DNA of 64,000 bases from Trichosphaerium sp. ATCC 40318 (lineage: Eukaryota > Protista > Tubulinea), in assembly GCA_038496445.1 (NCBI GenBank), contig JALMLS010000316.1, forward strand, positions 70,012 through 134,011, written 5' to 3'. Shown piece by piece: positions 10,448 to 50,602 of the stretch (positions within the stretch are counted from its first letter, which is position 1; the number at the start of each line of letters is the position of its first letter). The notes beneath the pieces were generated by a model, which saw only the letters and a program-made list of their open reading frames with translations, had not been told where the DNA came from and made no database searches. The position numbers were made by a program, and so were the translations under genes.

Positions 10448-13400
10448 ATGGCTTCACGTACAAGGGGTTCCCCTACCCTTGCAAAGGGTGCACCGTCTAA
10501 AGTCAAAGTAATTGTACGACTGCGGCCGTTTCTAGACAGAGAAACAAAAGGAAGATGCGTATCAGTAGAACCAAGTGCTATTCGACTCGCAGATTCGCGT
10601 AGAATGTCTTCTGAAGAATTAAAATACGCGTACGTTCAGTTTTGATCGAATGTAGTAATACCATTGGGTTTGACACTTATTGAACTATCAGTTTCGACCA
10701 TTGCTACGATAAACAAACAGACACCAGGACAATTTGGAAAAAGGAGATTCTACCAAATCTTAATCAAGTATTACGCGGTGTGCACGCTACAATATTTGCA
10801 TACGGAATGACTGGAGCTGGTAAGCATAAACGATTTTATGTTTTTGAAAAAAATGTAACGTATAATTCTGACAGTTTGGTTTTAGGCAAAACCTTCACTA
10901 TGCAAGGGAATGATAAGAAACCGGGTACGTTTTTTAGAAAAAAATTCATTTGCGTCGTTTTAGCTTTTATTGACGTTGATCGCAGGTATAATCCCTTTAA
11001 CTGTTCAACACGTACTCAAGCAGTTAAATGGACCACAAACGACGCGAAATGGAGGAAGTAAAGTGTCGATAAGCATTGGTTTTATTCAAATTTACAACGA
11101 AAAAGTTTTTGACTTATTGAACGCTACTGGGAAGGACTTACCAGTTCGAAAAAGCAGTAGCGGTGAAACCGTAATTTCAGGTCTTCACGAGGTACGTCAA
11201 AGTGATGATTCAAGGAGCACAAACTCTTTTAAAAATAAAACAAATACAAAAAAACGGTCGAATTTGAAAATCATTTTTACCGGTCTGTACACGGATTATT
11301 TTTGTTACTAGTCGCCCCTTTTGAGTTTCGTGCAATGTATCTTAACGGTAGTAGGAACCTTTGGAATCTTACGATATGTTTACTGAGTTATATCACGATG
11401 CTTTATCGAGACGATTTACTGGCTCTACAAAGCTTAATAATGAGTCATCGAGAAGTCATTCGGTACTCATGTTGCGTATAAAAACAGTGACACAGACAAG
11501 GGTATGCAAGCGTTATTTTGAAACGTCCTTTTAAAAACCAAAAATGAGCAAAATGATTTTCTATTTTTCACGTGTTTTTCGCATCTCGTTTTTACTGACA
11601 TTTGCTTAGATCATTACTGGTAAAGTAAATCTGATTGATCTTGCTGGTAATGAGGACAATCGTAAGACTGCTAATAAAGGTACGGGCTTTTTTTTTGTTA
11701 GAGCGTCAGTGCATACTCGTTGCGAGTATTTTTTTTCTTTGTATTACGTTAAGGTGTTTTCGGCGTTGACTCGTTTGTTTTTAGGAATGCGCCTAACAGA
11801 ATCGCAAAATATTAACAACTCTTTGTTTGTCCTATCAAAAGTCGTAACTGCCTTAAACAAAGGCGCTATACGCGTACCATACCGAGACTGTAAATTAACA
11901 AGACTTCTACAAGTACGTTTTTTTTTTTTTTGGAAATCTTTTCGTTTCATTTGTGCTTTATTTGGATTTACGCACGTGTTGTATTCGATACTTTTTTGTA
12001 TCACATATCTGTATTTGCATACACTCAAAATAGACGTTGTGTACTTTGTACCGTAATTCAAGAATTCTTGATGATTACCACTTTTTTCTCATTTTTTCTC
12101 TTTTTTATAGGATTCTTTGGGAGGAAGGAGTAACGCTATCATGATTGCTAATATAGCACCATCTGTAGAACATTTTCAAAATACATACTATACTCTCAAT
12201 TTTGCTAGTAAATCCAGAGAGGTAGTCAATGCACCTGTTGCACATTCAGGTACGTCAAGAAAAAAGTTTGAAAAGAAAATTTTTCAAGAATTGCGCTCCC
12301 AGACATTTCGTTCCTTTGTGCCATTATCCACGTACTCACATGTTTTTTTAGAAGCTGTTACACCTCCAGCACGACCTGTAAATAAGAAACGTATGTGGCA
12401 ATCATTTTTGTTGGTCTTACTTGTTGCTAACGAACATTTTAGCTATAACCTACTTTGTTGAGGAGTATAGTGAAAACAGTAAGCGAGGAGGTAGAACACG
12501 TATGCGTTTACCTCTACCGCGACCTGCCATTGATAACAAACGTAAGCATATATTTTACATTCTCCAGAGCTTACAAGTTGATAGATTTGGTTAATCAGAC
12601 GCAATTTGAGAGTCTAATAAGACGAGTTCGAAAGTGAGTTTTAGAACAAAAGTATTTTTTTTTTTCAATCTTCCTTCTAATCTCTTTGCTTCAGTATTGA
12701 GAAGGAAACACGTACAAAGACCCCTCAGTTTAGAGCAAAAGCTCATAATGCCATTGATCCTAATTTGGCTGCAATTGTTGTAAAGACCCCAGCTAAATTG
12801 AGGAACTTGAGCAAAGAAGAAAGAGCCGAGTACGTTTTTTGGGTTTAGGTGTTTTACAAATACTGACTTTGTTATCTTTCAGAAAATCGTGCGAGCTTGT
12901 TAAAGTTGCACGAAAGCACGATAAATTAGGACTACACGCTCAGAGTCTTATGGAGTTTACACAAGGTACACACTAATCCCTTTAACTTTCGCAATTTTTT
13001 CTCATTTTATTCTTATCTAATTAAAAAAACAACACTCATATTGCTTGTTTATATATTCATGTATTATTATTACAGCCCAACGTTTCTTGGATAAGAGTGA
13101 TCCGAAATTCCAAGGATTGAACATAAAGATACAGAAGAGGATAGATAGGCTACGACGCCTTATAAACGAAAATGGAGCTGGCTTTGACAATGAAGAAAAC
13201 ATGGTTCCTAACCGTCGGTCGTCACAAAAGCCAGGATCACTCAAAGTAAGTTAGCGCATGTCTAGACTTGTAAGGTACCTCTTCTTCTCTAATATCTACA
13301 TAGCGTAAGACAAGTGTTTCAGAGACAAAACCAAGAACTAAAGCAAGAAAAAAAAGTACTGAGTTTTCTGCAGCTCAAATTAGAGTTGTTCAAGTTAACT

Positions 13401-13851: not shown

Positions 13852-15046
13852 GAACCTGTTACCATTGTAAAATAAAGTGTAAAGTCATATCAATTTTATA
13901 TTACTTTTTTAGTTTTTACTGTGATATGACCTACGTAAACTGTTTGTGATCCATAGGTATCTTAAACAGCTATGTTGTAGTACTATACGATAGTCCTTTC
14001 TTGGTAATTTCAGCCACCAAAAACAAAAGGGGAGGTGGCGGCACGTGCATTTTTCTCGCGCTGATTTTGTTCCCAATCAAGGGAGGTGTCAGGATACGCG
14101 AGCTTTGTTATGGTAGGCGGGTACAGAGCCCTATAAAGGGCCTGTATTCCTCGTCTGGAAGGATGTTCAATGATGTGTGTAAACGCAGTAGCGGTGTCGC
14201 AATTGTCGCCATAGTAATACAGCTACCGCCTACTCTTTACCTGCGCTTACAAGGACAATGAAACATTTGAGGTTATAGGACGTTAGTTCAGCGATAGTTA
14301 TTCATTCACATTTGGTGTGTTGAGAGTTTAGTCATAGTTTCGAAGTAAACACGTCTCCTTGGCTGACTTAAGCAATCCCTTACAACTTGTCTTAAATGTC
14401 GGGTTTAAACTGGAATGCCTCGCTAAATGGTTCTTGACTTGTTGTCTACTTCCTGTGAATCCAGTGTGACTACAGTTTCGCCGATTTAGCTGGCTATCAG
14501 AATGAATCCAACAGACGTTTGCTATTGGTATGCTATCGTACTACTGCCGCTCCCCACTGACAAAACTGAATTGAAGCGCATTTGTAGTATGACTTTGAAA
14601 TTGAAAAAAAAATAGTGGTATACAAAAACTACTACAACCCATAGAATATGTGGTACTGGTAGCTAAGGATATCTTTTTGGAAAGTTAGGGTCAGGGCAAC
14701 TTTCTTCAAAAATGAAAAATCATCTTGTTTTCGGAAAGTTGACGAAAATTCAGCAAGAAAAACGTGACGTCACTACGAAAGTATTCTTCTCTTACCATAA
14801 TTCAGCATCTTTCAATAGTAATAAGTGTATATTGTTGCCTCTGTTTGTTGTAAACCATGATTTTGTATTATTTTCACGAAGGATTATTACCAACAGATCT
14901 GACGACCGAAACTTAACGAGTTTTTAGCTGATTAATCGGTTGGACGCAAGTTGTCAAACAGTTCTTTACGATTGGTAATAATCATACGATAGTACAAACA
15001 ATTCATTTACTTTAGTGACTAGGAACTTTTGTATTTGTGTTTGCGA

Positions 15047-16996
15047 ATGACATCTAAGAGTTCAGTCACTTACACGCTAGTTGAAGCCGCAATCCAATGT
15101 TTGGACGATAATGTACGTTACACTTTTTGGTCCGGTTTAAAAAGGTTACAATAGCGTCTATATAAGTTTTAAGTGTTATTAGGGAGGTAGCCCTTCAATG
15201 CATGCGAAAGCGATTGCTGAATATTGCATCTCGAAAGGTTGGATGAACAACACCAAAACACCTCATAATTCAATATCATCCGCTCTAAACGTCCATATAA
15301 AAAAGAGCGGAAATCAATCGTATTTTGAAAAAGTTGCTCCAGCTTGCTACGCGCTCTCAAAGTACTATAATAGCCTAAAGAATGAAATGGAGGACGATTT
15401 GATGCTTGAAGAAAAGGATTTCAACGATGAGGAAAAACCAAAACTAAAAATCACGCTAAAGGTTGCCAGCGCTAATACCTCATCTCAAAATGGCGTCTCG
15501 CAAGTCCATGCGTTAGAAAAGCAGTTAGAAAATCTTAAAAAAGTTTACACATCGGACGTAAGTGGTTGGAAACAAAAGTATTTGGCGTCAGTAGTTGAGA
15601 ACAAGGCTTTAAAAAAAAAGCTTGGTAAATTGGAGCAAGAAGTACAGATATTGAAGTATGGTAACCCAAGTACGTTATTCAACGCACTAGATCAATAATT
15701 CTTCCATTCTAATTTATAATACTGCAGATCACCAGGTAGATAACGTTAGGGATTTATTGTGTAAGATTCTTACGCCTTACAACTGTGTCTAAACTGTTTT
15801 TTTGCTTTCTTTTTTCAATATTTCGGAAAAGCGTAGATCAAGATTTTTACATGCTGTTTTTATTCACTGAAATGATGAAACGTTGAATGTACTTATTTGT
15901 TCACTTTTAGATCGTGGTATGGGTAATCCTCTATGCCCTTGGTACCTCCCTAATGAAGCATTTCATTCTCTACCATGGCGAACTGTAAAGAACCATTACC
16001 AATCGGAAATAAGTGCATTTAATGCGCCAACAATTTACAACTTTGTTTCGACGCTATTCACTTCTACTGCGCCAGACTCGTGGTATATTTCGCGAATCTT
16101 GGCTATTGATAACAAAGACCCTCTACAGACAATGTTCCAACGAAGAATGCAAACAATGGGTGAGATAGGCGCTTTCGGCAAATATCACGTGCAGTTTTTT
16201 TGGTAACTTTGTTTTACTGTTTAGATATGCGAGCAAATGATCCTACGTTTGCACCTTCATGGAAAAGTGAGGCAAACGTTCCTTTGCGATCTCAATTATT
16301 AAGAAGACTTCAGTCTTTTGAGTGTACCGATCCAAGACAAGTATGTAAGTTTGTATGGGCATGGCATGGAACAGATCCTAAGTATGTTGATCAAATATGT
16401 AATGCTGGATTTGCTGCTATTGGAAAAACGGACTCAGGTTTGACGTTGAAATAATATACGTAGCTCTTTGGTACTAACATCAGTTTTTGTAGGATACTTT
16501 GGTAACGGAATATATGGTTCTATCCAAGCTAAGTATTCTGGTACTGTATACACAAAACACAAATGTTTATTGCTATGTGTAATGTCATTCCTCAACGTAT
16601 TTCCAGTTGTACGTTCCTTGCTTTTTTTGGTCAATTACAACATAAACTTGTTTTTTTCCCACTTCGTTCACGTGTTTGTTCCGCTTCGATTGTTAACCTT
16701 GTTCAGGTTCATGATGATATGAAGATGCTTATGGGAAAGAATGCATATAAAACATATGATGCTCATTATATACCAGTAGTACCACGTGATCCAAATGATC
16801 CTGATGAGACAATATTTTACGGACTTGATAAAAAAACACTGTTCCTGTTTACGACGAATTTGTTGTGTTTGAGGTACGGTTACTCAACCTAACGTTAGAA
16901 ACTCAACTCATATTTGATATTTAGGAATCACAAATTCTACCTAGATTCGTTGTGTATTATGAAGATGCTGAAGAGAATTCAATGGATTGTGATTAA
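15047..16996 (+). CDS. HARE-HTH + coiled coil + PARP-type ADP-ribosyltransferase domain protein (1-nt frameshift in an A7 run at 16830-16836)
   Basis: HARE-HTH pattern TLVEAAIQCL..PSMHAKAIAEYCISKGW..KTPHNSISSALNVHI..FEKVAPACYAL. ART motifs WHGT, GYFGNGIY, YDEFVVFEESQILPRFVV. Intron 15670-15910 joins the halves in frame. Confidence 0.75.
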
Positions 16997-17602
16997 GAAT
17001 AAATATCAAATATCAACAACTCACAGAGTGCTGACGTTCCTAACTATCTTGATAAAAGGTGTACAAATGCAAATAACCAATCTCAGCTCGTCTCTTTCTT
17101 AAAACTCCACTACTTGCGCTCTAATTTCTCGAGAGTTTTCTCTATGCGTAGCAGTAGCGTGTAACCCATGATTCATTCTCGTTAAAGCGAGGGTGCTTTG
17201 AAAATGCTTAGTGTGAATGCAAAAGCCATTAGTTATGATCAACATGGGTAGTGTTGACTACCAGGCAACTTTGTACACCTGAGTAAGCAGTCTCCATTTA
17301 TGGGTTTGTTACGAAATTGGAGTTTATTAAGTGAGCTAGAAGTACTTGTTCGCTAGAAAACCACTAGAAATACGTATATTCATGTATTGCGACAAAAATA
17401 GAGCGAAATTTGAACTACTCCGCCTTAGAGTGTATATCCGCCGCATGTATGTTGTAGCGATTAGTGAGCATGTTGGTGTACAAACCCGTACGTAACAACA
17501 CAATATACGATCGTATATTTGTCCACGAAAAACCTTAAAAAAGAAACTCCACCTGCTTACCTTAATTACAAATTCCTCAATACAGAAGCAACGTATCTCA
17601 CA

Positions 17603-20068: not shown

Positions 20069-20599
20069 ATGCGCTTCGTTTTCACCTTTTGCTTATTTTT
20101 ATCGCTAGTCCTTGCAATAAAGGAGTGCGCCAAGGATACTACTCCTACTTGCGATGTTTACGACAGCTATTGTGAGGACTTCTACGAGACCAGGGGCACT
20201 AAGCAATACAACTGCTACTGGAATAGACACAAAGATGTGTGCGAGGGAGTAGAAAGGTGCATTGTAAATAACGCAACTTGTCCTGCCTATGAGTATGCTG
20301 AAACGTGTGCAAATTTTACTTCGCTTGATTGCCATAAACATTGGGTTCATGGTAGTCAACAAGGGCAAAGATGTGAATGGGATTATGATACTAAGAGCTG
20401 TGGCCAAATAGGACAGATATGCAAGGGCAGCCGCGATGATACTTGTAATACTTACCAAACTGACGATTGTAAAGACATGGAAGGTGATGTTTGTGGAAAG
20501 TTTTATGAGGACCCTGGTCACCCAAGTATTACATACAACTGTGCCTGGATCAATAACAAATGTTTGGGCGCAAGACGATGTGGTGACAAAGACTATTAA
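20069..20599 (+). CDS. Intronless secreted Cys-rich protein with about 3 internal repeats
   Basis: Signal peptide; repeated C..C..(F/H)(Y/W)....(Y/Q)xCxW...C units. Confidence 0.8.
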   Translation: MRFVFTFCLFLSLVLAIKECAKDTTPTCDVYDSYCEDFYETRGTKQYNCYWNRHKDVCEGVERCIVNNATCPAYEYAETCANFTSLDCHKHWVHGSQQGQRCEWDYDTKSCGQIGQICKGSRDDTCNTYQTDDCKDMEGDVCGKFYEDPGHPSITYNCAWINNKCLGARRCGDKDY

Positions 20600-23659: not shown

Positions 23660-25966
23660 TAACCTTGCAAACTAAACACAAAAGAGCTGGAATCGCAATA
23701 AGCAATGCAAGTAGTACAAGTCCACCAAGACCCATGACCACTTTCTGAAGAGGTTCATCCTCTTTTCCAAGTTCACTTTCTTCTTGAGCAGGCGATAGAA
23801 TTGCAGTACATTGTGATCCTTTTGAATCAATAAGAGGTCCAACTGTTGAGATATTTTTGATTGTGACTTTAGCTTTTTCTAAAAGAGAGGCACTTAGTAC
23901 AATAACAAGAAAACTTTAATAGAAGTGTTATAGCAATAAATACCTTGTCCAAACACACACTGTTTTACTTCTATTACTCCTTGTTTATCGAATATTATCT
24001 GACTATCTTGCTGCCACCACATTGAACCTTAAGTAAAGTATTAGAGTAAGTCAACGATAACTATAAATACCTTGGATTACTAACGGCACTTTTAAAGTAA
24101 ACAAGATTGGTACATAAAAGTCACCAAACAAAGTCCACTTGTTATTAAGACACAAACAACGTTCCAAAGGTCGAGGATATCCACCACACATGCACTGATC
24201 ATCGGTTAGTACACCAGTTTGCTGTGCACATGTGTTTGGAGAGGTAGGTGAACCGGGTTGTTCAGTAGTCGACGGCGCTCCTGTTGTAGGAGGTACAGTT
24301 GTTGGAGGGATTGTTGTTGGCGATGTAGTTGTAGGAGATGTGGTAGTTGGAGATACGGTTGTTGGCGGCGTGGTTGTAGGAGGTAGTGTCGTTGGTGGCA
24401 TGGTAGTAGGAGGTAGTGTCGTTGGTGGCATTGTTGTGGGTGGTAATGTTGTTGGCGGTGTTGTAGTTGGGGGTGCAGTTGTTGGGGGCATGGTAGTAGG
24501 AGGTAGTGTTGTTGGGGGCATGGTAGTAGGAGGTAGTGTCGTTGGAGGCATGGTAGTAGGAGGTAGTGTCGTTGGTGGCATTGTTGTGGGTGGTAATGTT
24601 GTTGGGGGTGCAGTTGTTGGGGCCGCGGTAGGAGGTGCAGTGGTTGGAGGCATTGTTGTTGGCGGTGAAGTTGTTGGAGGCCTTGTTGTTGGGGCCGTTG
24701 GAGAAGCACATTTAGTTTTGAAGAGATTGAATTGTGCTTTTGAATTAACAAAAGAAGTCAACAGTAGATTGCAAGTACTAATATGTACATCGAAAAAATA
24801 GTTTTCTGTAGGCACACCAATTAAGGTAATTTCTTCTACATCAGTTATAGCATAGCTACATTAGTTAGATGGCAATCGTAAATAAACAAAACGTTTAGGT
24901 GAGACTTACGTATCTACATGTATTGTATACACTCTGATCTTGCTGGCACTGGCGTCCCATGTAACAGCAACAAACCTATAAATAGCTTTATAGTAAACAA
25001 CTTTGATTGGTACACTTGGTTGATTCCCTAGTGTAAACATAGCGCCATTGTTATCTAAGAAACAAAGTAGTTTAGTTACGTGGCACCAAGACAAATAAAA
25101 TTAATTCTTACCGCTAAACACTACTCGCGAATGTTGATTACGGCTTAGAGAGACGAAATTGAAATTATGTGAACTATGTGCAAACGAAACAGCACGTGGG
25201 TGATCATATCTTGTAGTCAGAGCACCACCAAAAATATATCCTGCAATAGCACTAGTAGTTAGTCTCGAATTATGATCGGGAATAAAACCCTCCCAAGAAT
25301 AGACATATAATCCGCTGGTCCAAGAGAGGTCGTAAGCCATAATCTTGGGTGCAGTAATGGTAGAAGCGAGATCATAACAACACTTCTCCCCCTCTGCCAC
25401 GTTTCCATATCTCATAAAGAAACTTTTAGCGCCCGAAACCTGATAAAATGTTACATAAATATTATCCTGGACGGTTTCATGAGTTGCAGTAGGCCTCATA
25501 TCTCCTATTATTCCATAACCAAGAAGATCGCTTTTGTATCTCACGGGGGAGCCATTTTCATCCAAAAATAATGCAGCGAGGTGCGTTGTTCCACCCACTG
25601 CGCAAGCATATAAAATGTTGAATTCATTGCCAGGACCATATTCAATATCGTACTGAAGCCACTTATGATTATTAGAATCAGGAGCTATGCGACAAATTGA
25701 ATCGACATAAATACCAGTTATACGTCCTGTGAACTCATTATAGAAGATGCCTGAGAAGTGACTAGCAGGGGTTGAGTTAGTTGATTGAAAATAGATAGTT
25801 GTTTAACGTACTGATCAGAGTATGGGTCCTTCCACAGCATTAGGAACTGATTAGTACCAGTACTGTACGTTGTTACAATTCTCCAAGGGTTAATAGTGAG
25901 AGTGATAGCAGGTAACGATTGTACTACGCAACACAATAGTGATAGAACCAAAATACTTGTCCTCAT
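23660..25966 (-). CDS. Type I membrane/surface glycoprotein with a Pro-Thr mucin stalk
   Basis: Signal MRTSILVLSLLCCVVQS; PPTTx repeats; Cys module CMCGG..CLC; C-terminal TM segment VVMGLGGLVLLALLIAIPALLCLV. The 3' end is approximate. Confidence 0.8.
24290..24700 (-). repeat. Coding 15-bp tandem repeat (PPTT[L/M/A/T]) with 30-bp and ~180-bp higher-order duplications
   Basis: GGCATGGTAGTAGGAGGTAGTGTCGTTGGT units on the + strand. Confidence 0.95.
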
Positions 25967-27070: not shown

Positions 27071-29752
27071 ATGGCTGAAACAAAATCAAGAGAAGAACTC
27101 GAGCAAGAGCTTGAAAAGTGTAGAGCTAAAGTAAAAGAGGTACGAAAACGCTATATTGATAAATTGGTGGCAATTGTAGACGCTACAAACGATATTTTTT
27201 GCACGTTCTATTTTTCTTTGGCTTACCAGCGTATTAGCTAGAATCGCGCTTGTCTGTATCAGAGCCTGATTTACCACGCCGTGTGTCAATTGGTGCAGTA
27301 CGTATTTACTAATGGATCACAAAACGCAGCTGAATACGATATTCTTGTATGTGCGACACGATCTAATACTATCATAGCTTGCTAAAAACCCGGATGCGTA
27401 TATTGGCAAATATATTGGTGTAGGTGGCTGGATTAGATCAGCTCGGTACGTTTCGTAGCGTATACAGCAGTTTTGAAGCTCTTCAGCCGCAAGTCTCTAT
27501 TTCCGACTGACACTCCCTAGTACTGCCGGAGGTGGTTCATTTTGCTTCGTCACAATTACTGACGGTACTACACACGCCACTCTTCAAGTACGCACTCAAA
27601 TTATTTAAAAACTGTCAACTAGCCAACACAGTATTCCTTACGAACACACGCAGGTAGTAGTAGACGGCAAGATTGAGAACTTTGATAAAGTCAAGTCTGG
27701 AAGCACTGGCATGTCAATTTTCGTAAAGGGAAAGCTCATTGAGAGTAAAGGTAAGCTATACGTGACGTCAACACAATAATAATGGTTGTTTATAGGTAAA
27801 GGACAGTTATTTGAGCTCTCTTGCCAATATATTCGCGTTTTGGGTGAATGCCCACAAGATGGATACCCACTACAAGGTAAAGGACACGGACTAGAATATT
27901 TGCGTGGTTTGACGCACTTGAGACCGCGAACACGATTGGTATGCACATTTTTAGTTAATTTTTTGTTCAAAACACAAAAACAACTTTTTTCTTGGACGCC
28001 TTTGTTCTCGAATTATTTCGCTTCGTTAATATCAAATACCATGCTAATTTACGATTATAGTTTGGTGCTGTATTCAGGATCAGAAACGCTCTAGCATTCG
28101 CCACTCACTTGTTCTTCCAACAACAAGTAAGTTTTTTTTTTGATTTGTTTTTATGGTCCAATCTAACAATTTTTTAATAGGATTACTTATACGTTCACAC
28201 ACCTATCATCACAGCTTCTGATTGCGAAGGTGCTGGTGAGATGTTCCAACTCACAACATTGATGAAGGATGATGTTAAGGAAATTCCACAAACAAAAGAA
28301 GGAAAGGTTGATTACACCAAAGATTTCTTCAAACGCCCAACTTTCTTGACTGTATCTGGTCAATTAAACGTAGAAGCTTTTGCATGCGCATTATCCAACG
28401 TTTACACTTTTGGACCAACATTCAGGTACCCAACACGCATCAAACTTAGCTCGAAAAAAAAAGCTTCCCTCTTTAACATGTTTTCTTACACTTTTGTCTT
28501 TTTAGAGCTGAATACTCTTTTACTACTCGTCACGTCGCAGAATTTTGGATGATTGAACCTGAAATTGCCTTCGGTGATTTGTTAGAGAACATGGACTTGG
28601 CTGAGGTAATCGTTTTTTTAATATTTATTCCTCTTCCATTGAAAGGTAGTTACGCTTATGTGATTGTATAGGCATACGTCAAGTTTGTCATTAAATATTG
28701 CTTGGACAACGTTCACGGTGATTTATTGATCTGTGAAGAGCACCAAAAGAAGTGGTTGAAGGTACGTGTCGCTGAAGCTCAAGCAAAGGCAAAGAAAGCA
28801 GGTACACGTTAAAAAAATGGTAATTAAAATAAACAATCTTACTAATCGTTTACCAGCACAAGGAAAACCACAAAAGAAAAAGAAAAAGGGACCTAAAGAT
28901 TGGCATGCAGTACCTCTTATTGAGCGCCTCGAAAACCTTGCAAACTCCAGATTTGCTCGTATCACCTATACTGAGGCTATTGACCTATTGCTCAAAGCTG
29001 TTGAGGAAGGTATTGTGTTCGAAAACGTACGTTACGAGAAAACAATCTTGAAGAAGTTTCTTTGGTTGTTTGGTGTACTAATTGTTTGTTTCTTAGAAAG
29101 TTGAATGGGGTATTGATCTTGCTTCTGAGCATGAAAGATACATGGCTGAAACTGTATTCCGTAAACCAGTCATTGTTCGCGATTACCCAAAGGAAATCAA
29201 GGTAAAGCAGATGTTTCTGTTTGTATTTTTATTACATTTTAATTTTACATTCTCTTACCTTGTATTTTAAGGCTTTCTACATGCGCTTGAGCGATGATGA
29301 AAAGACTGTTGCTGCTATGGACATTCTTGTACCTGGTATCGGTGAATTAGTAGGAGGTATGTAACTGTTTTCTCAGCAGTGTTGGTTCGTTCAAATTGTG
29401 TTAAACACGCTTCGTAGGTTCTCAAAGAGAAGAACGTCTTGATGTACTAGAACGTCGTATCAAAGAATGTGGACTTGAAGAGAGCGCTTATAAATGGTAT
29501 CTCGATCTCAGACGCTACGGATCTGTGCCTCACTCTGGATTCGGTACGCTTTTATACAAAAAATATTGTTTACTAATTTATTTGTTGTAGGTGTTGGTTT
29601 TGGCCGTCTTGTAACATACGTTGCTGGTATCGAGAGTATCAAGGATGTACTTCCTTACCCAAGACACGCTGTCAAAGGTGTCAAATTGGATGTACGTCAT
29701 CATCAAATACTTTTTTTTTTATTTATTCTTTATTTAGCACGAAATGATCTAA
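27071..29752 (+). CDS. NARS: Asparaginyl-tRNA synthetase (bacterial/organellar-like type with a Lys-rich insertion)
   Basis: [82 protein letters not shown]. Confidence 0.95.
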
Positions 29753-46797: not shown

Positions 46798-49700
46798 TTA
46801 GTTATATGAGCTCACATTGCTCTCAAGACTAGCAATTCGGGCTAGTAGCTCAGCAATTTGATTACATTGATTAGCATTTTCTTCTTCAAGTTTAGTATTG
46901 TGTTCCTCCAGTTTAGTGATTCTGATAAGTTGTTTTGTGTTGTTTTTCTCTTGCTCAGCTTTAGTTTTCTGGAGCTCGGCAGTAACTTCTTGCAATTTGG
47001 TATTTGATTCCTCAATAACAGTTTTGTTTTCTTGTTTGAGCCTTGTAATTTCGTGTTTTAGTGATAGTACAAGCTGGTCTTGTGCGCTTGGTTGATCAGG
47101 TTGATTTGGATTTGTGGCTGCCCATAATTTTCTTCATAGTAAATGAGTAAACTATTATTATGTGTGTAGTCTTACCGTTTATTTTTAAATGAGTCTTCAT
47201 GAAACAACTCATCTGACTCATTAACATTGTCTGATTTTGAAAGCTCTTTGTTTGTCAGTTTTTTATTTCCAGTTGGTTTGATGATCTTGGTCTTTTTTGG
47301 CTTGCTTGATTTCTTTTTTGTTGTTTTACTTTTGTTCTGAACTATCCGTTTTCTTGACTTTACAACCTTAATAATATAACGTGCAACAGCTTGTACATCT
47401 AAATAAACAATAAGAGCAATACTTAAGGCCATATTAGACTATTTTACCTTGAGCCACAACCAACTCATCACGTGGATATACATCAATATTTTCTTTTACA
47501 GCTTCTCCCTTTTTGTTTACCACTGCATAATGACTTTGGTACCCAGGTTTAATAGGCTTACCCTTAAAGTTAATAGTATTTGTAGGTTTTTCAATTACCT
47601 ACCAATATTGTAAATAAACATAGAAACCAATGTTTGCATACAGGATACACATTGCCAGGTGTAACTAAACTCAGAATCAGAGTTTTGTCGCCTTGAGATA
47701 CATCATAAGAGCATGCATAAGAGAGACTACTCTATGGGATTATTAGAACAAGAACAAAGTGATGATTAAGTACTGTAAAATAGATTCCTTGTCCATAATA
47801 TCCAGCATCCAAGGCACTTACAGTTCCAAATCCAGCTTTTACAATGCTATAAGCTGCTTCAGCACGTGTTCCATGTGCCATTAACACAACAGGTAACTGA
47901 AAAATTAGTCACAAGTATGATGATTGCTACTACTACCTCTGTGTTGTTAGTTGGTACAGTTATCAAAGATGAAAACTTGTCGTAAACGTTTGTTCTTTGA
48001 ATGTGGTGAGTGTCACGTCTCCAATCATCCTTACAAAATAACTTGGGTAGTTCCCTAAAGTAACAATCAATAATCCTTACAACATGTTTACATACTGGTG
48101 CCTATGTTGAAGTATTGTGTTGTACATCCCAAAGTTTCGAAGCAAGACATCATTGCAAACAAGATGAGCTGATTTAACAGTGACTTGATCATAGCCATGC
48201 ATTTTAGACATCTGTTCATGAAGAAACTGTCGTTCTCTTTTGGCTACAGTGTCATTCTCATCAAAAAGGTCCAAAGTTCTATAATGTGTTGCCTTTTCAA
48301 TAAAACCCCTGTAAAATGTTAAACAATATAACAATGTGATAACTCAACTTGTTTTTTGATCTATCCCAGCCATGTGCATACTCCAATCGTGGGTTTAAGT
48401 CCCATAACGTCTTACTTTTTAATCCTTGTTGAAATCAAATGATTGTATTAACATTACTGTACCTGCTATAGTATCTCCTAATACAGTATTGGGTATGATA
48501 GGCTGAATAGCATATGTGCCAAGTTTACATTTGAGGTGCATGTCATCAATAGGCTTCTACCCACAAGTCAAAAAGAATATACCTATTTGACATACACTTT
48601 CTTTGTGCGTGTTTTGAGCACATTTGCTGCATATGTGAAGCTTATTTACCACTATACTAACAGTTAAAAGAATTGTATTTGATTAAAACTCACAATCTTG
48701 CGTATTTGATTTATGCAGTTGAATGGAGTTTATACACCAGCCTTCTTCTGCACACATTTGAGCAACATTACCAGTTGGTTTTGTTTTTTTACTCCACATG
48801 TCATCTGGTAAGTCATACAAAATACCTTCCATTAGTTCTCCTTGTTCAACCCAAAAGCTCTATAGTGAAATTAGCTGTAATACCTTTATAAAATTTGATA
48901 CCGAGGATTGTACAAATATGCGATTGTAAGTACAAATTAATGAACATATACCCTTTTGCATTGCAAGATTAAAATAAGAATGTGTTGGCTTAGTATGATT
49001 AATTTTCATATTTGACATAAGGCTGTACCAAGTACTGTAGCCATTTTGCAAGATGATATCTCCATTTTGGAGTGTTGACATTTGAACATGATAGCCATAG
49101 TGAGTGATTGTGTTGATTAGTTGGAAATTGTGACAAAACAGTTTCAAAAACTTTGGTGTATGCGGGATCATTGTCAACTACCTTCATCAATATAGTTCTA
49201 AAGCCAAACTTCTGTCCTCTCATTGTCCGTGAAAAAACATCATTTGCATTTGATAAGATGAGAAATACTGCTGTATTTTTACAGTGTGCTAATAGAGGTT
49301 GTTATTTAATGTTTTGCAAATAGAATCACCTGCATAAATTAAAGGTGTCCATCCTTTATTGTCTACTGCTTCAATACTAGCATGTGAGTTAATTAACTGC
49401 TCAACTATTCTACTGTGTCCACGTTCAGCTAGCCTGTATAAGTAAATTGTATTGTTAAGATTAATACCAGCAACATGTAAAGCTGTATGTCCATGGTTAT
49501 TTGTAGCGTTGACATTTGCATCTGCATTTATCAATAACTTAACAGTTTCATGGCGCCCACAATGTACTTAAGAGTTTTGAGAACATATTGTATTACAACA
49601 CCATACCTGCTTTGTGTAAAGCTGTCTTTCCATCTTTATCTGCAATATTGATATTTGCACCTGCATTGATCAATAAGCTAGCAATACCATGAAAAGCTGC

Positions 49701-50602
49701 AATTTGTGAGAACACAATGTATTTACAACACCGTACCTGCAACATGTAAGGCTGTCTTTTCATCTTTATCTGTACTATTGACATTTGCTCCTGCATTGAT
49801 CAATAACTTAGCAATATGATCATGTCCATAAAATGCTTAGAAATGTGAGAACAGACACTGTGTTTACAACAGGTACCTGCAAAATGTAAAGCTGTACGCC
49901 CATCTTTATCAATAACATTGGCATTTGCTCCTTCATTAATCAATAAGTTAGCTATAACATTGTGTCCATTAAACGCTGAGAAGTGTGAGAACAGACATTG
50001 TATTTACAACATAGTATTTACAACACCATACCTGCTTTGTGTAAAGCTGTTTGTCCATCTATGTCTATAGCGTTGATATTCACATCTGCATTGATCAGTA
50101 TTTTTACAACATTATCATCACGTCCATATTGCACTAGAAAATGTGAGAATATCTATTGTATTTACTGCAGTACCTGCTTTGTGTAAAGCTGTTCTTCCAT
50201 ATTTATCTACAGTATTGACATCTATCCACATTAAACACATTGATGCAATATTTGGCAAATCAGCACATGCTAAATTAAGTTGATATGCGCTTACGTCCAT
50301 TATACAAACCTGAATACAGTAGAATTTTTTTGGCTCTCTCTGGACTACATAGTTTGTCCTTTAGTTTGTTTACTACAAACACATGAACAAGTTACCTAGG
50401 ATAAACAGTACCTGTTGTGACATGCTTGAAAACTTTTTTTAATAATATTGAATCAAAGTCTACGCCCAAGATAGAAGTATCAAGATTGAAGCGGCGAAGT
50501 TTTTTCAGTTCGTCTAGGCATTATTAGTAGCTTATGTATTAAAACAAGTTTGATAATACCTTTTAAGTCTCGGTTAACTTCTTCTTGGCCCTGGATTGAC
50601 AT
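46798..50602 (-). CDS. Ankyrin-repeat + PARP-type ADP-ribosyltransferase + C-terminal coiled-coil protein (one apparent frameshift near 49030)
   Basis: At least 6 ANK exons (G+TALHxA). ART motifs MAHGT, GYYGQGIYFTSSLSYA, LSLVTPGNVYPV, GYQSHY, RDELVVAQDVQAVARYII. Lys-rich and coiled-coil tail. Start codon tentative. Confidence 0.8.
49330..50230 (-). repeat. Tandem ~140-bp exon+intron modules, one ankyrin repeat each
   Basis: Exons 49330-49428 (99 nt), 49468-49566 (99), 49607-49696 (90), 49737-49835 (99), 49877-49975 (99), 50032-50133 (102), all phase 1. Introns share GTAYGGTGTTGTAAATAC..GTTCTCACA..AG. Confidence 0.9.

What the first reader, a model, noticed from the sequence alone, without database searches (positions are those of the whole stretch)
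15047..16996. HARE-HTH fused to a PARP-type ART domain
Seen: an N-terminal winged-HTH pattern matching HARE-HTH (HB1/ASXL/restriction-endonuclease HTH), an acidic linker, a coiled coil, then an ART domain with WHGT / GIY / YDEFVV. Either donor (15661 or 15670) splices in frame to the acceptor at 15910. Known: HARE-HTH is a predicted reader of DNA or modified DNA in ASXL chromatin proteins and bacterial restriction systems. I do not know this fusion among described PARP architectures. Inference: a DNA- or chromatin-targeted ADP-ribosyltransferase, possibly sensing modified or foreign DNA. It is a second, architecturally distinct ART in the same window.
Basis: partly seen in the sequence, partly recalled or inferred. 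Interest (0 to 1): 0.75.

Follow-up and report, generated by a model that had tools for sequence, protein, structure and literature searches.

The report
Possible DNA-reader fused to PARP-like enzyme
An amoeba-type genome has a true HARE-HTH DNA-binding domain and helical stalk lying just upstream of a PARP-like ADP-ribosylating domain; one transcript may join them, but I could not show this, and the enzyme part has a reading-frame break in this assembly.

Summary
Exons 1 and 2 (15047-15669) encode a HARE-HTH: exon 2 alone passes Pfam's threshold, and both exons line up with an MMETSP protist transcript. An acidic linker and a helical stalk follow. Exons 3-7 (15911-16996) carry a PARP-like H / Y / E motif series. 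Its support is weak exon by exon but consistent, including collinearity with the ankyrin-ART gene in the same window.

Two caveats were missed:
- **Frame break.** The catalytic Glu motif is in frame only after a one-base break at an A7 run (16830-16836). This is either an assembly miscount or a real lesion.
- **Unproven fusion.** The strong donor at 15670 also has a nearer acceptor (15727) that leads to a stop, and ATG 15919 could start an ART-only protein.

Among 1.84 billion representative proteins, the HARE-HTH exon found 16 relatives and none has a PARP domain. No held paper describes this combination.

Verdict: a plausible lineage-specific new accessory domain on a PARP-type enzyme, in a genome that other notes of this scan describe as rich in PARP fusions. 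I put the fusion at about 50-55%. The scan did not find this fusion before on other DNA.

The parts
15047..15112 (+). Exon 1: start codon and the first helix of the HARE-HTH (22 codons)
   Evidence: Translation. Aligns with P0002 residues 177-196 (pairwise E = 3e-6; tblastn). An in-frame TAG lies upstream at 15020-15022.
15113..15182 (+). Intron 1, 70 nt, GTACGTTA...TTATTAG
   Evidence: The join restores a collinear HARE-HTH when compared with P0002.
15183..15669 (+). Exon 2: rest of the HARE-HTH (to about 15359), acidic linker (about 15369-15452) and helical or coiled-coil stalk (about 15492-15659). Ends in phase 1.
   Evidence: Pfam HARE-HTH 29.8 bits, above the 25.9 cut-off. 58% identity over 57 aa to P0002. 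AlphaFold2 model pLDDT 86-98 over residues 1-70, with helices at 104-123 and 129-159. Heptad a/d positions are hydrophobic at 11 of 18 in the best register.
15670..15910 (+). Candidate intron 2 (241 nt; GTACGTTA...CACTTTTAG). A weaker alternative donor lies at 15661.
   Evidence: Donor octamer identical to that of intron 1. GTACGT occurs 67 times in the window against 25.7 expected. The join to exon 3 is in frame. No RNA data.
15696..15698 (+). Stop codon reached if intron 2 is not removed. The product would be a HARE-HTH plus stalk protein of about 193 aa.
15728..15793 (+). Rival path. Acceptor AG at 15726-15727 gives a 58-nt intron (CTAAT lies 14 nt upstream). From there the frame either runs to a stop at 15791-15793, or a 33-nt cassette exon (15728-15760) with donor GTAAGA at 15761 rejoins exon 3 in frame.
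   Evidence: My reading; untested.
15911..16159 (+). Exon 3: presumed N-terminal part of the ART domain. Contains ATG 15919, which could start an ART-only protein.
   Evidence: Translation. No family hit. No significant match to the ankyrin-ART exon. Assigned by position only.
16225..16437 (+). Exon 4: His motif WHGT (16362-16373; His at 16365-16367)
   Evidence: Pfam PARP E = 0.13, profile positions 50-71 of 199. Atlas features point to PARP clusters at 0.90 and 0.87. Aligns with the ankyrin-ART exon, pairwise E = 7e-4.
16493..16608 (+). Exon 5: GNGIY motif (Tyr at 16513-16515) and the following strands
   Evidence: Aligns with the same ankyrin-ART exon directly after the exon-4 match. The second half matches the next ankyrin-ART exon (shuffle p = 0.005), and both exons end at ..[FY]PV.
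16707..16873 (+). Exon 6, with a frame break at the A7 run 16830-16836. The first part (to 16835) and the YDEFVVFE part (16838-16873; Glu at 16856-16858) are in frames one base apart.
   Evidence: The frame holding YDEFVVFE has TGA TAA just upstream and no AG nearby, so no intron can explain the shift (my reading). Weak collinear matches to the ankyrin-ART exon.
16925..16996 (+). Exon 7: last strand (ESQILPRFVVYY), acidic tail and TAA stop. It continues the YDEFVVFE frame in phase 0.
   Evidence: my reading of the frame.
16998..17003 (+). AATAAA, the likely poly(A) signal. It is the only one on the + strand between 14500 and 17600.
   Evidence: AATAAA also lies 9-30 nt after the stops of two other genes in the window.

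Best explanation
This is one spliced gene of 7 exons (8 if the 33-nt cassette exon is used), spanning 15047-16996 on the + strand. It encodes an N-terminal HARE-HTH winged helix, an acidic linker, a helical stalk that probably dimerises, and a C-terminal PARP-type ADP-ribosyltransferase domain with His, Tyr and Glu motifs and no PARP regulatory, WGR or zinc-finger modules.

Proposed working (inferred, not shown): the HARE-HTH tethers a dimer to DNA or chromatin, and the ART domain then uses NAD+ to ADP-ribosylate nearby proteins, itself or possibly DNA.

Shown: the HARE-HTH, the exon 1-2 and exon 4-5 joins, the motif order, and the frame break.

Inferred: the exon 2-3 join, catalytic activity, and the target.

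The frame break at the A7 run is either a homopolymer miscount in a long-read assembly or a recent lesion in this copy.
For: - HARE-HTH: Pfam above the gathering score on exon 2 alone. Exons 1 and 2 are collinear with MMETSP transcript protein P0002. The winged-helix model is confident.
- ART: exon 4 hits Pfam PARP at the His motif (E = 0.13). Atlas features give PARP clusters. Exons 4 and 5 align end to end with one exon of the ankyrin-ART gene, and that exon hits PARP at E = 2.6e-4. The shuffle test over six collinear exon pairs gives Fisher p = 3e-7.
- Fusion: the donor GTACGTTA at 15670 matches the intron-1 donor. GTACGT is 2.6-fold enriched in the window and also serves as a donor in the neighbouring kinesin gene. 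By composition such a hexamer falls within 40 nt of a stop about 1% of the time. The join is in frame. The only AATAAA follows the last stop. Both parts lie on the same strand, 212 nt apart from stop to acceptor.
Against:
- The intron would be 241 nt, against 51-98 nt for the gene's other introns and a published genome mean of 75 nt, if this is the Trichosphaerium draft (PMC10521059).
- A nearer acceptor at 15727 leads to a stop. ATG 15919 could start an ART-only protein.
- No protein with HARE-HTH plus PARP appeared among the relatives of exon 2 or of P0002.
- The PARP call is below Pfam's threshold for every single exon, and the joined model was not searched.
- The frame break removes the catalytic Glu and the last strands from the product as assembled.
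Confidence: 0.5

Rival explanations
1. These are two neighbouring genes. The first is a small HARE-HTH plus coiled-coil DNA-binding protein. It ends either at 15698 by read-through or at 15793 after a 58-nt intron. The second is a stand-alone PARP-like ART of about 290 aa starting at ATG 15919. The in-frame donor-acceptor pair would then be coincidence (a one-in-three chance for frame).
For: - Acceptor AG at 15726-15727 gives a typical 58-nt intron with a CTAAT branch-like motif 14 nt upstream.
- ATG 15919 lies 8 nt inside exon 3, and the ART frame is closed 30 nt upstream of the acceptor.
- The ART domain appears to begin at exon 3.
- No relative shows the fusion.
Against: - Only about 125-220 nt would be left for a terminator and a promoter.
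- No AATAAA lies between the two parts, while two other genes in the window carry one 9-30 nt after the stop.
- The acceptor at 15910 has the T-rich tract seen at the gene's other acceptors. The one at 15727 does not.
Confidence: 0.3
2. This is a decaying copy. The one-base frame break at the A7 run is real, so the locus no longer makes an active enzyme, whether or not it was once a fusion. At most it makes a HARE-HTH plus stalk protein with a truncated ART lacking the catalytic Glu. This rival overlaps with the other two readings; it is not exclusive of them.
For: - The break is in the assembly, and no intron can explain it.
- An earlier first-reader note of this scan (unchecked) describes ART-family genes in this window as undergoing birth and death.
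- No transcript-derived protein for this gene is in the databases searched.
Against: - It is the only lesion. All seven exons are otherwise open, all splice sites are canonical, the His, Tyr and Glu motifs are kept, and the downstream frame runs cleanly to a stop followed by AATAAA.
- If the window comes from the published Trichosphaerium draft, that assembly was built with Canu from Nanopore and PacBio reads of amplified DNA. Homopolymer miscounts can survive polishing in such assemblies.
Confidence: 0.35
3. The C-terminal part is not an ART at all. The His, Tyr and Glu motifs are chance look-alikes in AT-rich open frames.
For: - No single exon reaches Pfam's PARP threshold.
- PDB sequence searches of exons 3 and 4 found nothing relevant.
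- Exon 3 has no recognisable relatives.
Against: - The only Pfam hit of exon 4 is PARP, at exactly the His-motif positions of the profile.
- Independent language-model features give PARP clusters.
- The motifs are in PARP order and spacing and are collinear with a second PARP-like gene, with a shared exon end after ..[FY]PV.
Confidence: 0.07

Closest known systems
ASXL1-3 / plant HB1 and other eukaryotic HARE-HTH chromatin proteins (Pfam PF05066; Aravind and Iyer 2012, as cited in PMC4738411)
   Same: An N-terminal HARE-HTH winged helix placed at the front of a larger protein with a chromatin-type partner activity. It is a predicted reader of DNA or modified DNA.
   Different: Here the partner is a PARP-like ART rather than ASXH/PHD or a deubiquitinase partner. 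There is no sequence closeness beyond the domain.
P0002, an MMETSP transcript protein (541 aa; JGI sample 3300016894)
   Same: The closest relative of the HARE-HTH: 58% identity over 57 aa, and the similarity covers both exons. GC3 is about the same (0.32).
   Different: It has no ART. It carries a sub-threshold Chromo match at the N-terminus and a weak zf-LSD1 match at the C-terminus. Its organism is not known to me.
Bacterial multi-HARE-HTH + Mrr_cat restriction endonucleases (P0001, P0003, P0004, P0006 and others)
   Same: A HARE-HTH coupled in one chain to an effector that acts on what the HTH binds. These make up 10 of the 16 sequence relatives found.
   Different: They have two to six HARE-HTH copies and a nuclease effector, and they are prokaryotic. 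This gene has one copy, a helical stalk and an ART.
DNA-targeted PARPs: PARP1-3 (zinc fingers, WGR) and plant-type SAP-PARPs (Perina et al. 2014, PMC4245714)
   Same: A DNA-binding module N-terminal to a PARP catalytic domain with a His-Tyr-Glu triad.
   Different: No WGR, PARP zinc finger, BRCT, SAP or helical regulatory domain was detected here. Clade membership could not be tested.
Ankyrin-PARP-coiled-coil gene in the same window (about 46798-50602, minus strand)
   Same: A PARP-like domain with collinear motifs and a shared exon end. A binding module is joined to the ART, and a coiled coil is present.
   Different: Only distantly related (33% over 24 aa at the His motif). That gene has ankyrin repeats and a C-terminal coil. 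This one has a HARE-HTH and a coil between the two domains.

Membership tests
HARE-HTH (Pfam PF05066) | Profile match above Pfam's gathering score | tested here: met
   Exon 2 alone scores 29.8 bits against a cut-off of 25.9, E = 8e-7, profile positions 17-69 of 71.
HARE-HTH (Pfam PF05066) | Complete domain, including the first helix (profile positions 1-16) | tested here: met
   Exon 1 aligns with P0002 residues 177-196, directly before the exon-2 match at 202-258. Pfam places P0002's HARE-HTH at residues 186-255.
HARE-HTH (Pfam PF05066) | Winged helix-turn-helix fold | tested here: inconclusive
   The AlphaFold2 model of exon 2 has helix, helix and beta-hairpin at pLDDT 86-98. Foldseek against PDB gave only weak, generic winged-helix matches (TubR, PadR, forkhead, ETS; E >= 0.18). 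The model lacks the exon-1 helix.
HARE-HTH (Pfam PF05066) | Binds DNA or modified DNA | not testable with these tools
   This is a prediction in the literature and needs a binding assay.
PARP catalytic domain (Pfam PF00644) | Profile match above Pfam's gathering score | tested here: inconclusive
   The best single exon scores 12.2 bits, E = 0.13, against a cut-off of 26.7.
PARP catalytic domain (Pfam PF00644) | His, Tyr and Glu motifs in order (H-G-[ST]; G-x-G-I-Y; Y-x-E-x-[IV]-V) | tested here: met
   WHGT at 16362-16373, GNGIY with Tyr at 16513-16515, YDEFVV with Glu at 16856-16858. The motif definitions come from my own knowledge of the family.
PARP catalytic domain (Pfam PF00644) | Uninterrupted reading frame through the domain | tested here: not met
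   One-base frame break at the A7 run 16830-16836, between the HY..VV strand and the Glu motif. Whether it is an assembly error or a real lesion could not be decided.
PARP catalytic domain (Pfam PF00644) | Homology along the domain to an independently recognisable PARP-like domain | tested here: met
   Exons 4 and 5 abut on ankyrin-ART exon 47893-47774, which hits PARP at E = 2.6e-4. Fisher p = 3e-7 over six exon pairs, with the pairs chosen by eye.
PARP clade 1 (DNA-dependent PARP1-3) | WGR and helical regulatory domain before the catalytic domain | tested here: not met
   No such Pfam hit on any exon at E <= 10.
Single-chain HARE-HTH-ART fusion | One mRNA joining exon 2 to exon 3 | not testable with these tools
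There is no matching protein or contig in the collections.

The most novel reading that the evidence does not exclude
The HARE-HTH acts as a sensor of modified or foreign DNA, such as giant-virus DNA, and brings a dimeric, active ADP-ribosyltransferase onto it. That would be a eukaryotic counterpart of bacterial HARE-HTH-Mrr modification-dependent restriction, with ADP-ribosylation replacing cleavage as the effector. It would be one more 'sensor-ART' design in an amoeba whose PARP family is said to be greatly expanded.
Probability: 0.1. Interest if true: 0.8.

Novelty: new variant of a known kind. Interest (0 to 1): 0.4.

Why it matters
If the two parts are one protein, this is a PARP-type enzyme aimed at DNA by a HARE-HTH. 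That domain is otherwise known from ASXL-type chromatin regulators and bacterial restriction enzymes. I found the pairing neither in the PARP surveys I could read nor among the relatives in 1.84 billion representative proteins.

It would give a simple test system for two open questions: what HARE-HTH domains actually read, and how ADP-ribosylation is directed to chromatin or foreign DNA in protists. If the parts are two genes, or the copy is dead, this is an ordinary by-product of domain shuffling in a PARP-rich genome.

Tried and rejected
- **Reads.** Neither the splice junctions nor the A-run length could be checked.
- **Joined model.** I did not build or search the spliced protein. All searches were exon by exon, by reference. 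This is why there is no fold and no significant profile score for the ART domain.
- **Word searches.** Exon 2 and exon 4 were blank, as the length filter makes likely. A search with P0002's HARE-HTH region found only P0002 itself.
- **Collection scans.** Exon 4 and exon 3 in the metagenome collection, and exons 4 and 2 in the viral collection, found nothing.
- **Exact look-ups.** Three ORFs of the window were not on record, so no independent assembly of this locus was found.
- **PDB sequence searches.** Exons 3 and 4 gave nothing relevant.
- **Exon 3.** The Atlas search was uninformative, and there was no significant match to the ankyrin-ART N-terminal exon.
- **BLASTP of the C-terminal exons against the ankyrin-ART exons.** No alignment. 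Only the shuffle test gave weak signals.
- **Genome paper supplement.** Searching the table for this gene or its neighbours failed because the stored file is cut.
- **A tiny intron as the cause of the frame break.** Rejected: the Glu-motif frame has TGA TAA just upstream, and there is no AG before it.
- **Programmed frameshifting at the A7 run.** Considered and set aside as unlikely. No proper slippery heptamer lies in the zero frame.
- **Extra upstream exons, such as a chromo-like exon as in P0002.** None found by tblastn.

Full report
**Gene model**

Reading 14700-17400 together with the ORF list gives a spliced model on the + strand.

| Part | Coordinates | Notes |
|---|---|---|
| Exon 1 | 15047-15112 | ATG, 22 codons |
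| Intron 1 | 15113-15182 | 70 nt |
| Exon 2 | 15183-15669 | ends in phase 1 |
| Candidate intron 2 | 15670-15910 | 241 nt |
| Exon 3 | 15911-16159 | |
| Exon 4 | 16225-16437 | |
| Exon 5 | 16493-16608 | |
| Exon 6 | 16707-16873 | frame break inside |
| Exon 7 | 16925-16996 | TAA stop |

All introns are GT...AG. Apart from intron 2, they measure 51-98 nt. The window is 35-42% G+C.

Earlier notes of this scan name the organism as the marine amoeba Trichosphaerium. I did not verify that. The published draft's figures fit the window: G+C 37.7%, mean intron 75 nt, mean exon 154 nt (PMC10521059).

**The HARE-HTH is real**

- Exon 2 alone scores 29.8 bits on Pfam HARE-HTH, against a gathering score of 25.9. 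It covers profile positions 17-69 of 71.
- The missing first helix is in exon 1. The best relative, P0002, aligns with exon 1 at its residues 177-196 and with exon 2 at 202-258 (58% identity). The two matches run in order with a few residues between. This also supports the exon 1-2 splice.
- An AlphaFold2 model of exon 2, made with a 16-row alignment (A1), shows helix, helix and beta-hairpin at pLDDT 86-98. A disordered acidic stretch follows, then two long helices at residues 104-123 and 129-159.
- Foldseek against PDB returned only weak, generic winged-helix proteins.
- The helical tail has a heptad-like pattern, with a/d positions hydrophobic at 11 of 18 in the best register. 'Coiled coil' is therefore a reasonable inference, not a result.

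**Relatives of the HARE-HTH**

phmmer of exon 2 against 1.84 billion representative proteins gave only 16 hits at E <= 0.001.
- Ten are bacterial-type proteins with two to six HARE-HTH copies and an Mrr_cat restriction nuclease domain.
- Five have HARE-HTH only. One of these is P0002.
- One is a repeat-rich giant protein that is probably a spurious hit.
- None has a PARP domain.

P0002 is an MMETSP transcript protein of 541 aa. It has sub-threshold Chromo and zf-LSD1 matches, and its GC3 of 0.32 equals this gene's. Searching with P0002's HARE-HTH region among proteins of 298-947 aa found only P0002 itself.

**The ART domain is likely, but only weakly shown**

The evidence is therefore split across short pieces.
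- Exon 4's only Pfam hit is PARP, at profile positions 50-71 (the His motif), with E = 0.13.
- Its language-model features point to PARP clusters at 0.90, 0.87, 0.79 and 0.77.
- Exon 4 residues 47-70 and exon 5 residues 1-8 align end to end with a single exon of the ankyrin-ART gene on the minus strand (47893-47774). Pairwise E values are 7e-4 and 2e-3. That exon itself hits PARP at E = 2.6e-4. This supports the exon 4-5 splice.
- The second half of exon 5 matches the next ankyrin-ART exon, and both end at ..[FY]PV (shuffle p = 0.005).
- Exon 6 and the Glu motif give weak collinear matches.
- Over six exon pairs Fisher's p is 3e-7. I chose the pairs by eye, which weakens this figure.
- Exon 3 has no recognisable relative. 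I assign it to the domain by position only.
- The motif series is WHGT, then GNGIY, then YDEFVV, followed by a last strand. No WGR, zinc-finger or regulatory domain is present.

Within exon 6, the part ending ...DKK (to 16835) and the part reading TVPVYDEFVVFE (16838-16873) are in frames one base apart. The change falls in an A7 run at 16830-16836.

The Glu-motif frame has TGA TAA directly upstream and no AG before it, so an intron cannot account for the shift. Only that frame continues in phase into exon 7, reaches the stop at 16996, and is followed two bases later by AATAAA.

As assembled, the product would lose the catalytic Glu and the last strands. This is the only lesion in the gene. It is either a homopolymer miscount or a recent or allelic frameshift. 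A miscount is plausible for a Nanopore/PacBio Canu assembly of amplified DNA polished with Pilon, if this is that assembly. I could not decide between them.

**Is it one gene?**

For the fusion:
- The donor at 15670 is GTACGTTA, identical to the intron-1 donor.
- GTACGT is the enriched donor form here: 67 seen against 25.7 expected. It is also used in the neighbouring kinesin gene.
- By composition, a chance GTACGT within 40 nt of a stop is expected about 1% of the time.
- The join to the T-rich acceptor at 15910 is in frame.
- No AATAAA lies between the two parts.

Against the fusion:
- The intron would be 241 nt.
- A nearer acceptor (AG at 15726-15727, a 58-nt intron, with CTAAT 14 nt upstream) leads to a stop at 15791-15793.
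- However, from that same acceptor a 33-nt cassette exon (15728-15760) with donor GTAAGA would rejoin exon 3 in frame.
- ATG 15919, 8 nt into exon 3, could start an ART-only protein.
- No relative shows the architecture.

I put the fusion at about 50-55%.

**Literature**

- The full-text library has no paper linking HARE-HTH with a PARP or ART fusion.
- The broad PARP survey by Perina et al. (PMC4245714) reports more than one hundred PARP types but does not contain the terms 'HTH' or 'winged'.
- The same holds for a 2026 preprint on fungal PARPs.
- The original HARE-HTH paper (Aravind and Iyer 2012) is not held, so I could not check its architecture figures.
- Later papers by the same group describe HARE-HTH as linked to restriction nucleases and N6A methylases in prokaryotes and to chromatin domains in eukaryotes.

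**Verdict**

The pieces are real. The fusion is plausible but unproven. The enzyme part is interrupted in this assembly. If confirmed, this is a new accessory-domain variant of the PARP family in a genome that other notes of this scan describe as full of PARP fusions with ankyrin, Roco and NADAR modules (unchecked). Any sensing of modified or foreign DNA is speculation.

- The joined spliced model was not searched or folded.

Noticed in passing
window 10780-12461 (+): A kinesin-motor-like gene ([10 protein letters not shown] ... GKTFTM ... IIPLTV motifs, by eye) split by short introns with GTAAGC and GTACGT donors. It served here as an independent example of the GTACGT donor.
   Followed up: partly
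window 46798-48334 (-): ART exons of the ankyrin-ART gene. One exon holds both the His and Tyr motifs (47893-47774; Pfam PARP E = 2.6e-4). The Glu motif reads RDELVV at about 47470-47450, followed by a Lys-rich stretch. It shares an exon end (after ..YPV) with the gene studied here.
   Followed up: partly
L001 (JGI 3300016894, MMETSP transcript; protein P0002): A protist transcript encoding a sub-threshold Chromo match, a HARE-HTH and a weak zf-LSD1-like C-terminus. It is a single-member cluster and the only eukaryote-type close relative of this HARE-HTH. Its organism is not known to me; its GC3 equals that of this gene.
   Followed up: partly
P0001, P0003, P0004, P0006, P0008-P0012: A bacterial-type family with two to six tandem HARE-HTH domains followed by an Mrr_cat restriction nuclease. 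These are the nearest prokaryotic relatives of the HARE-HTH studied here.
   Followed up: no
window 1-64000: Rfam at gathering thresholds found no RNA family anywhere in the window. That includes 14019-14564, which another reader flagged as telomerase-RNA-like.
   Followed up: no
window 20069-20599 (+): An intron-free ORF of 176 aa with a signal-peptide-like start and many Cys residues. AATAAA lies about 30 nt after its stop. The exact protein is not on record in the collections.
   Followed up: no
window 24051-24815 (-): An ORF with long PTT/PPTT mucin-like repeats. G+C and GC skew rise locally (0.417 and 0.21).
   Followed up: no
window 28241-29104 (+): ORF pieces that look by eye like a class II aminoacyl-tRNA synthetase of the Asn/Asp type. 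Not tested.
   Followed up: no
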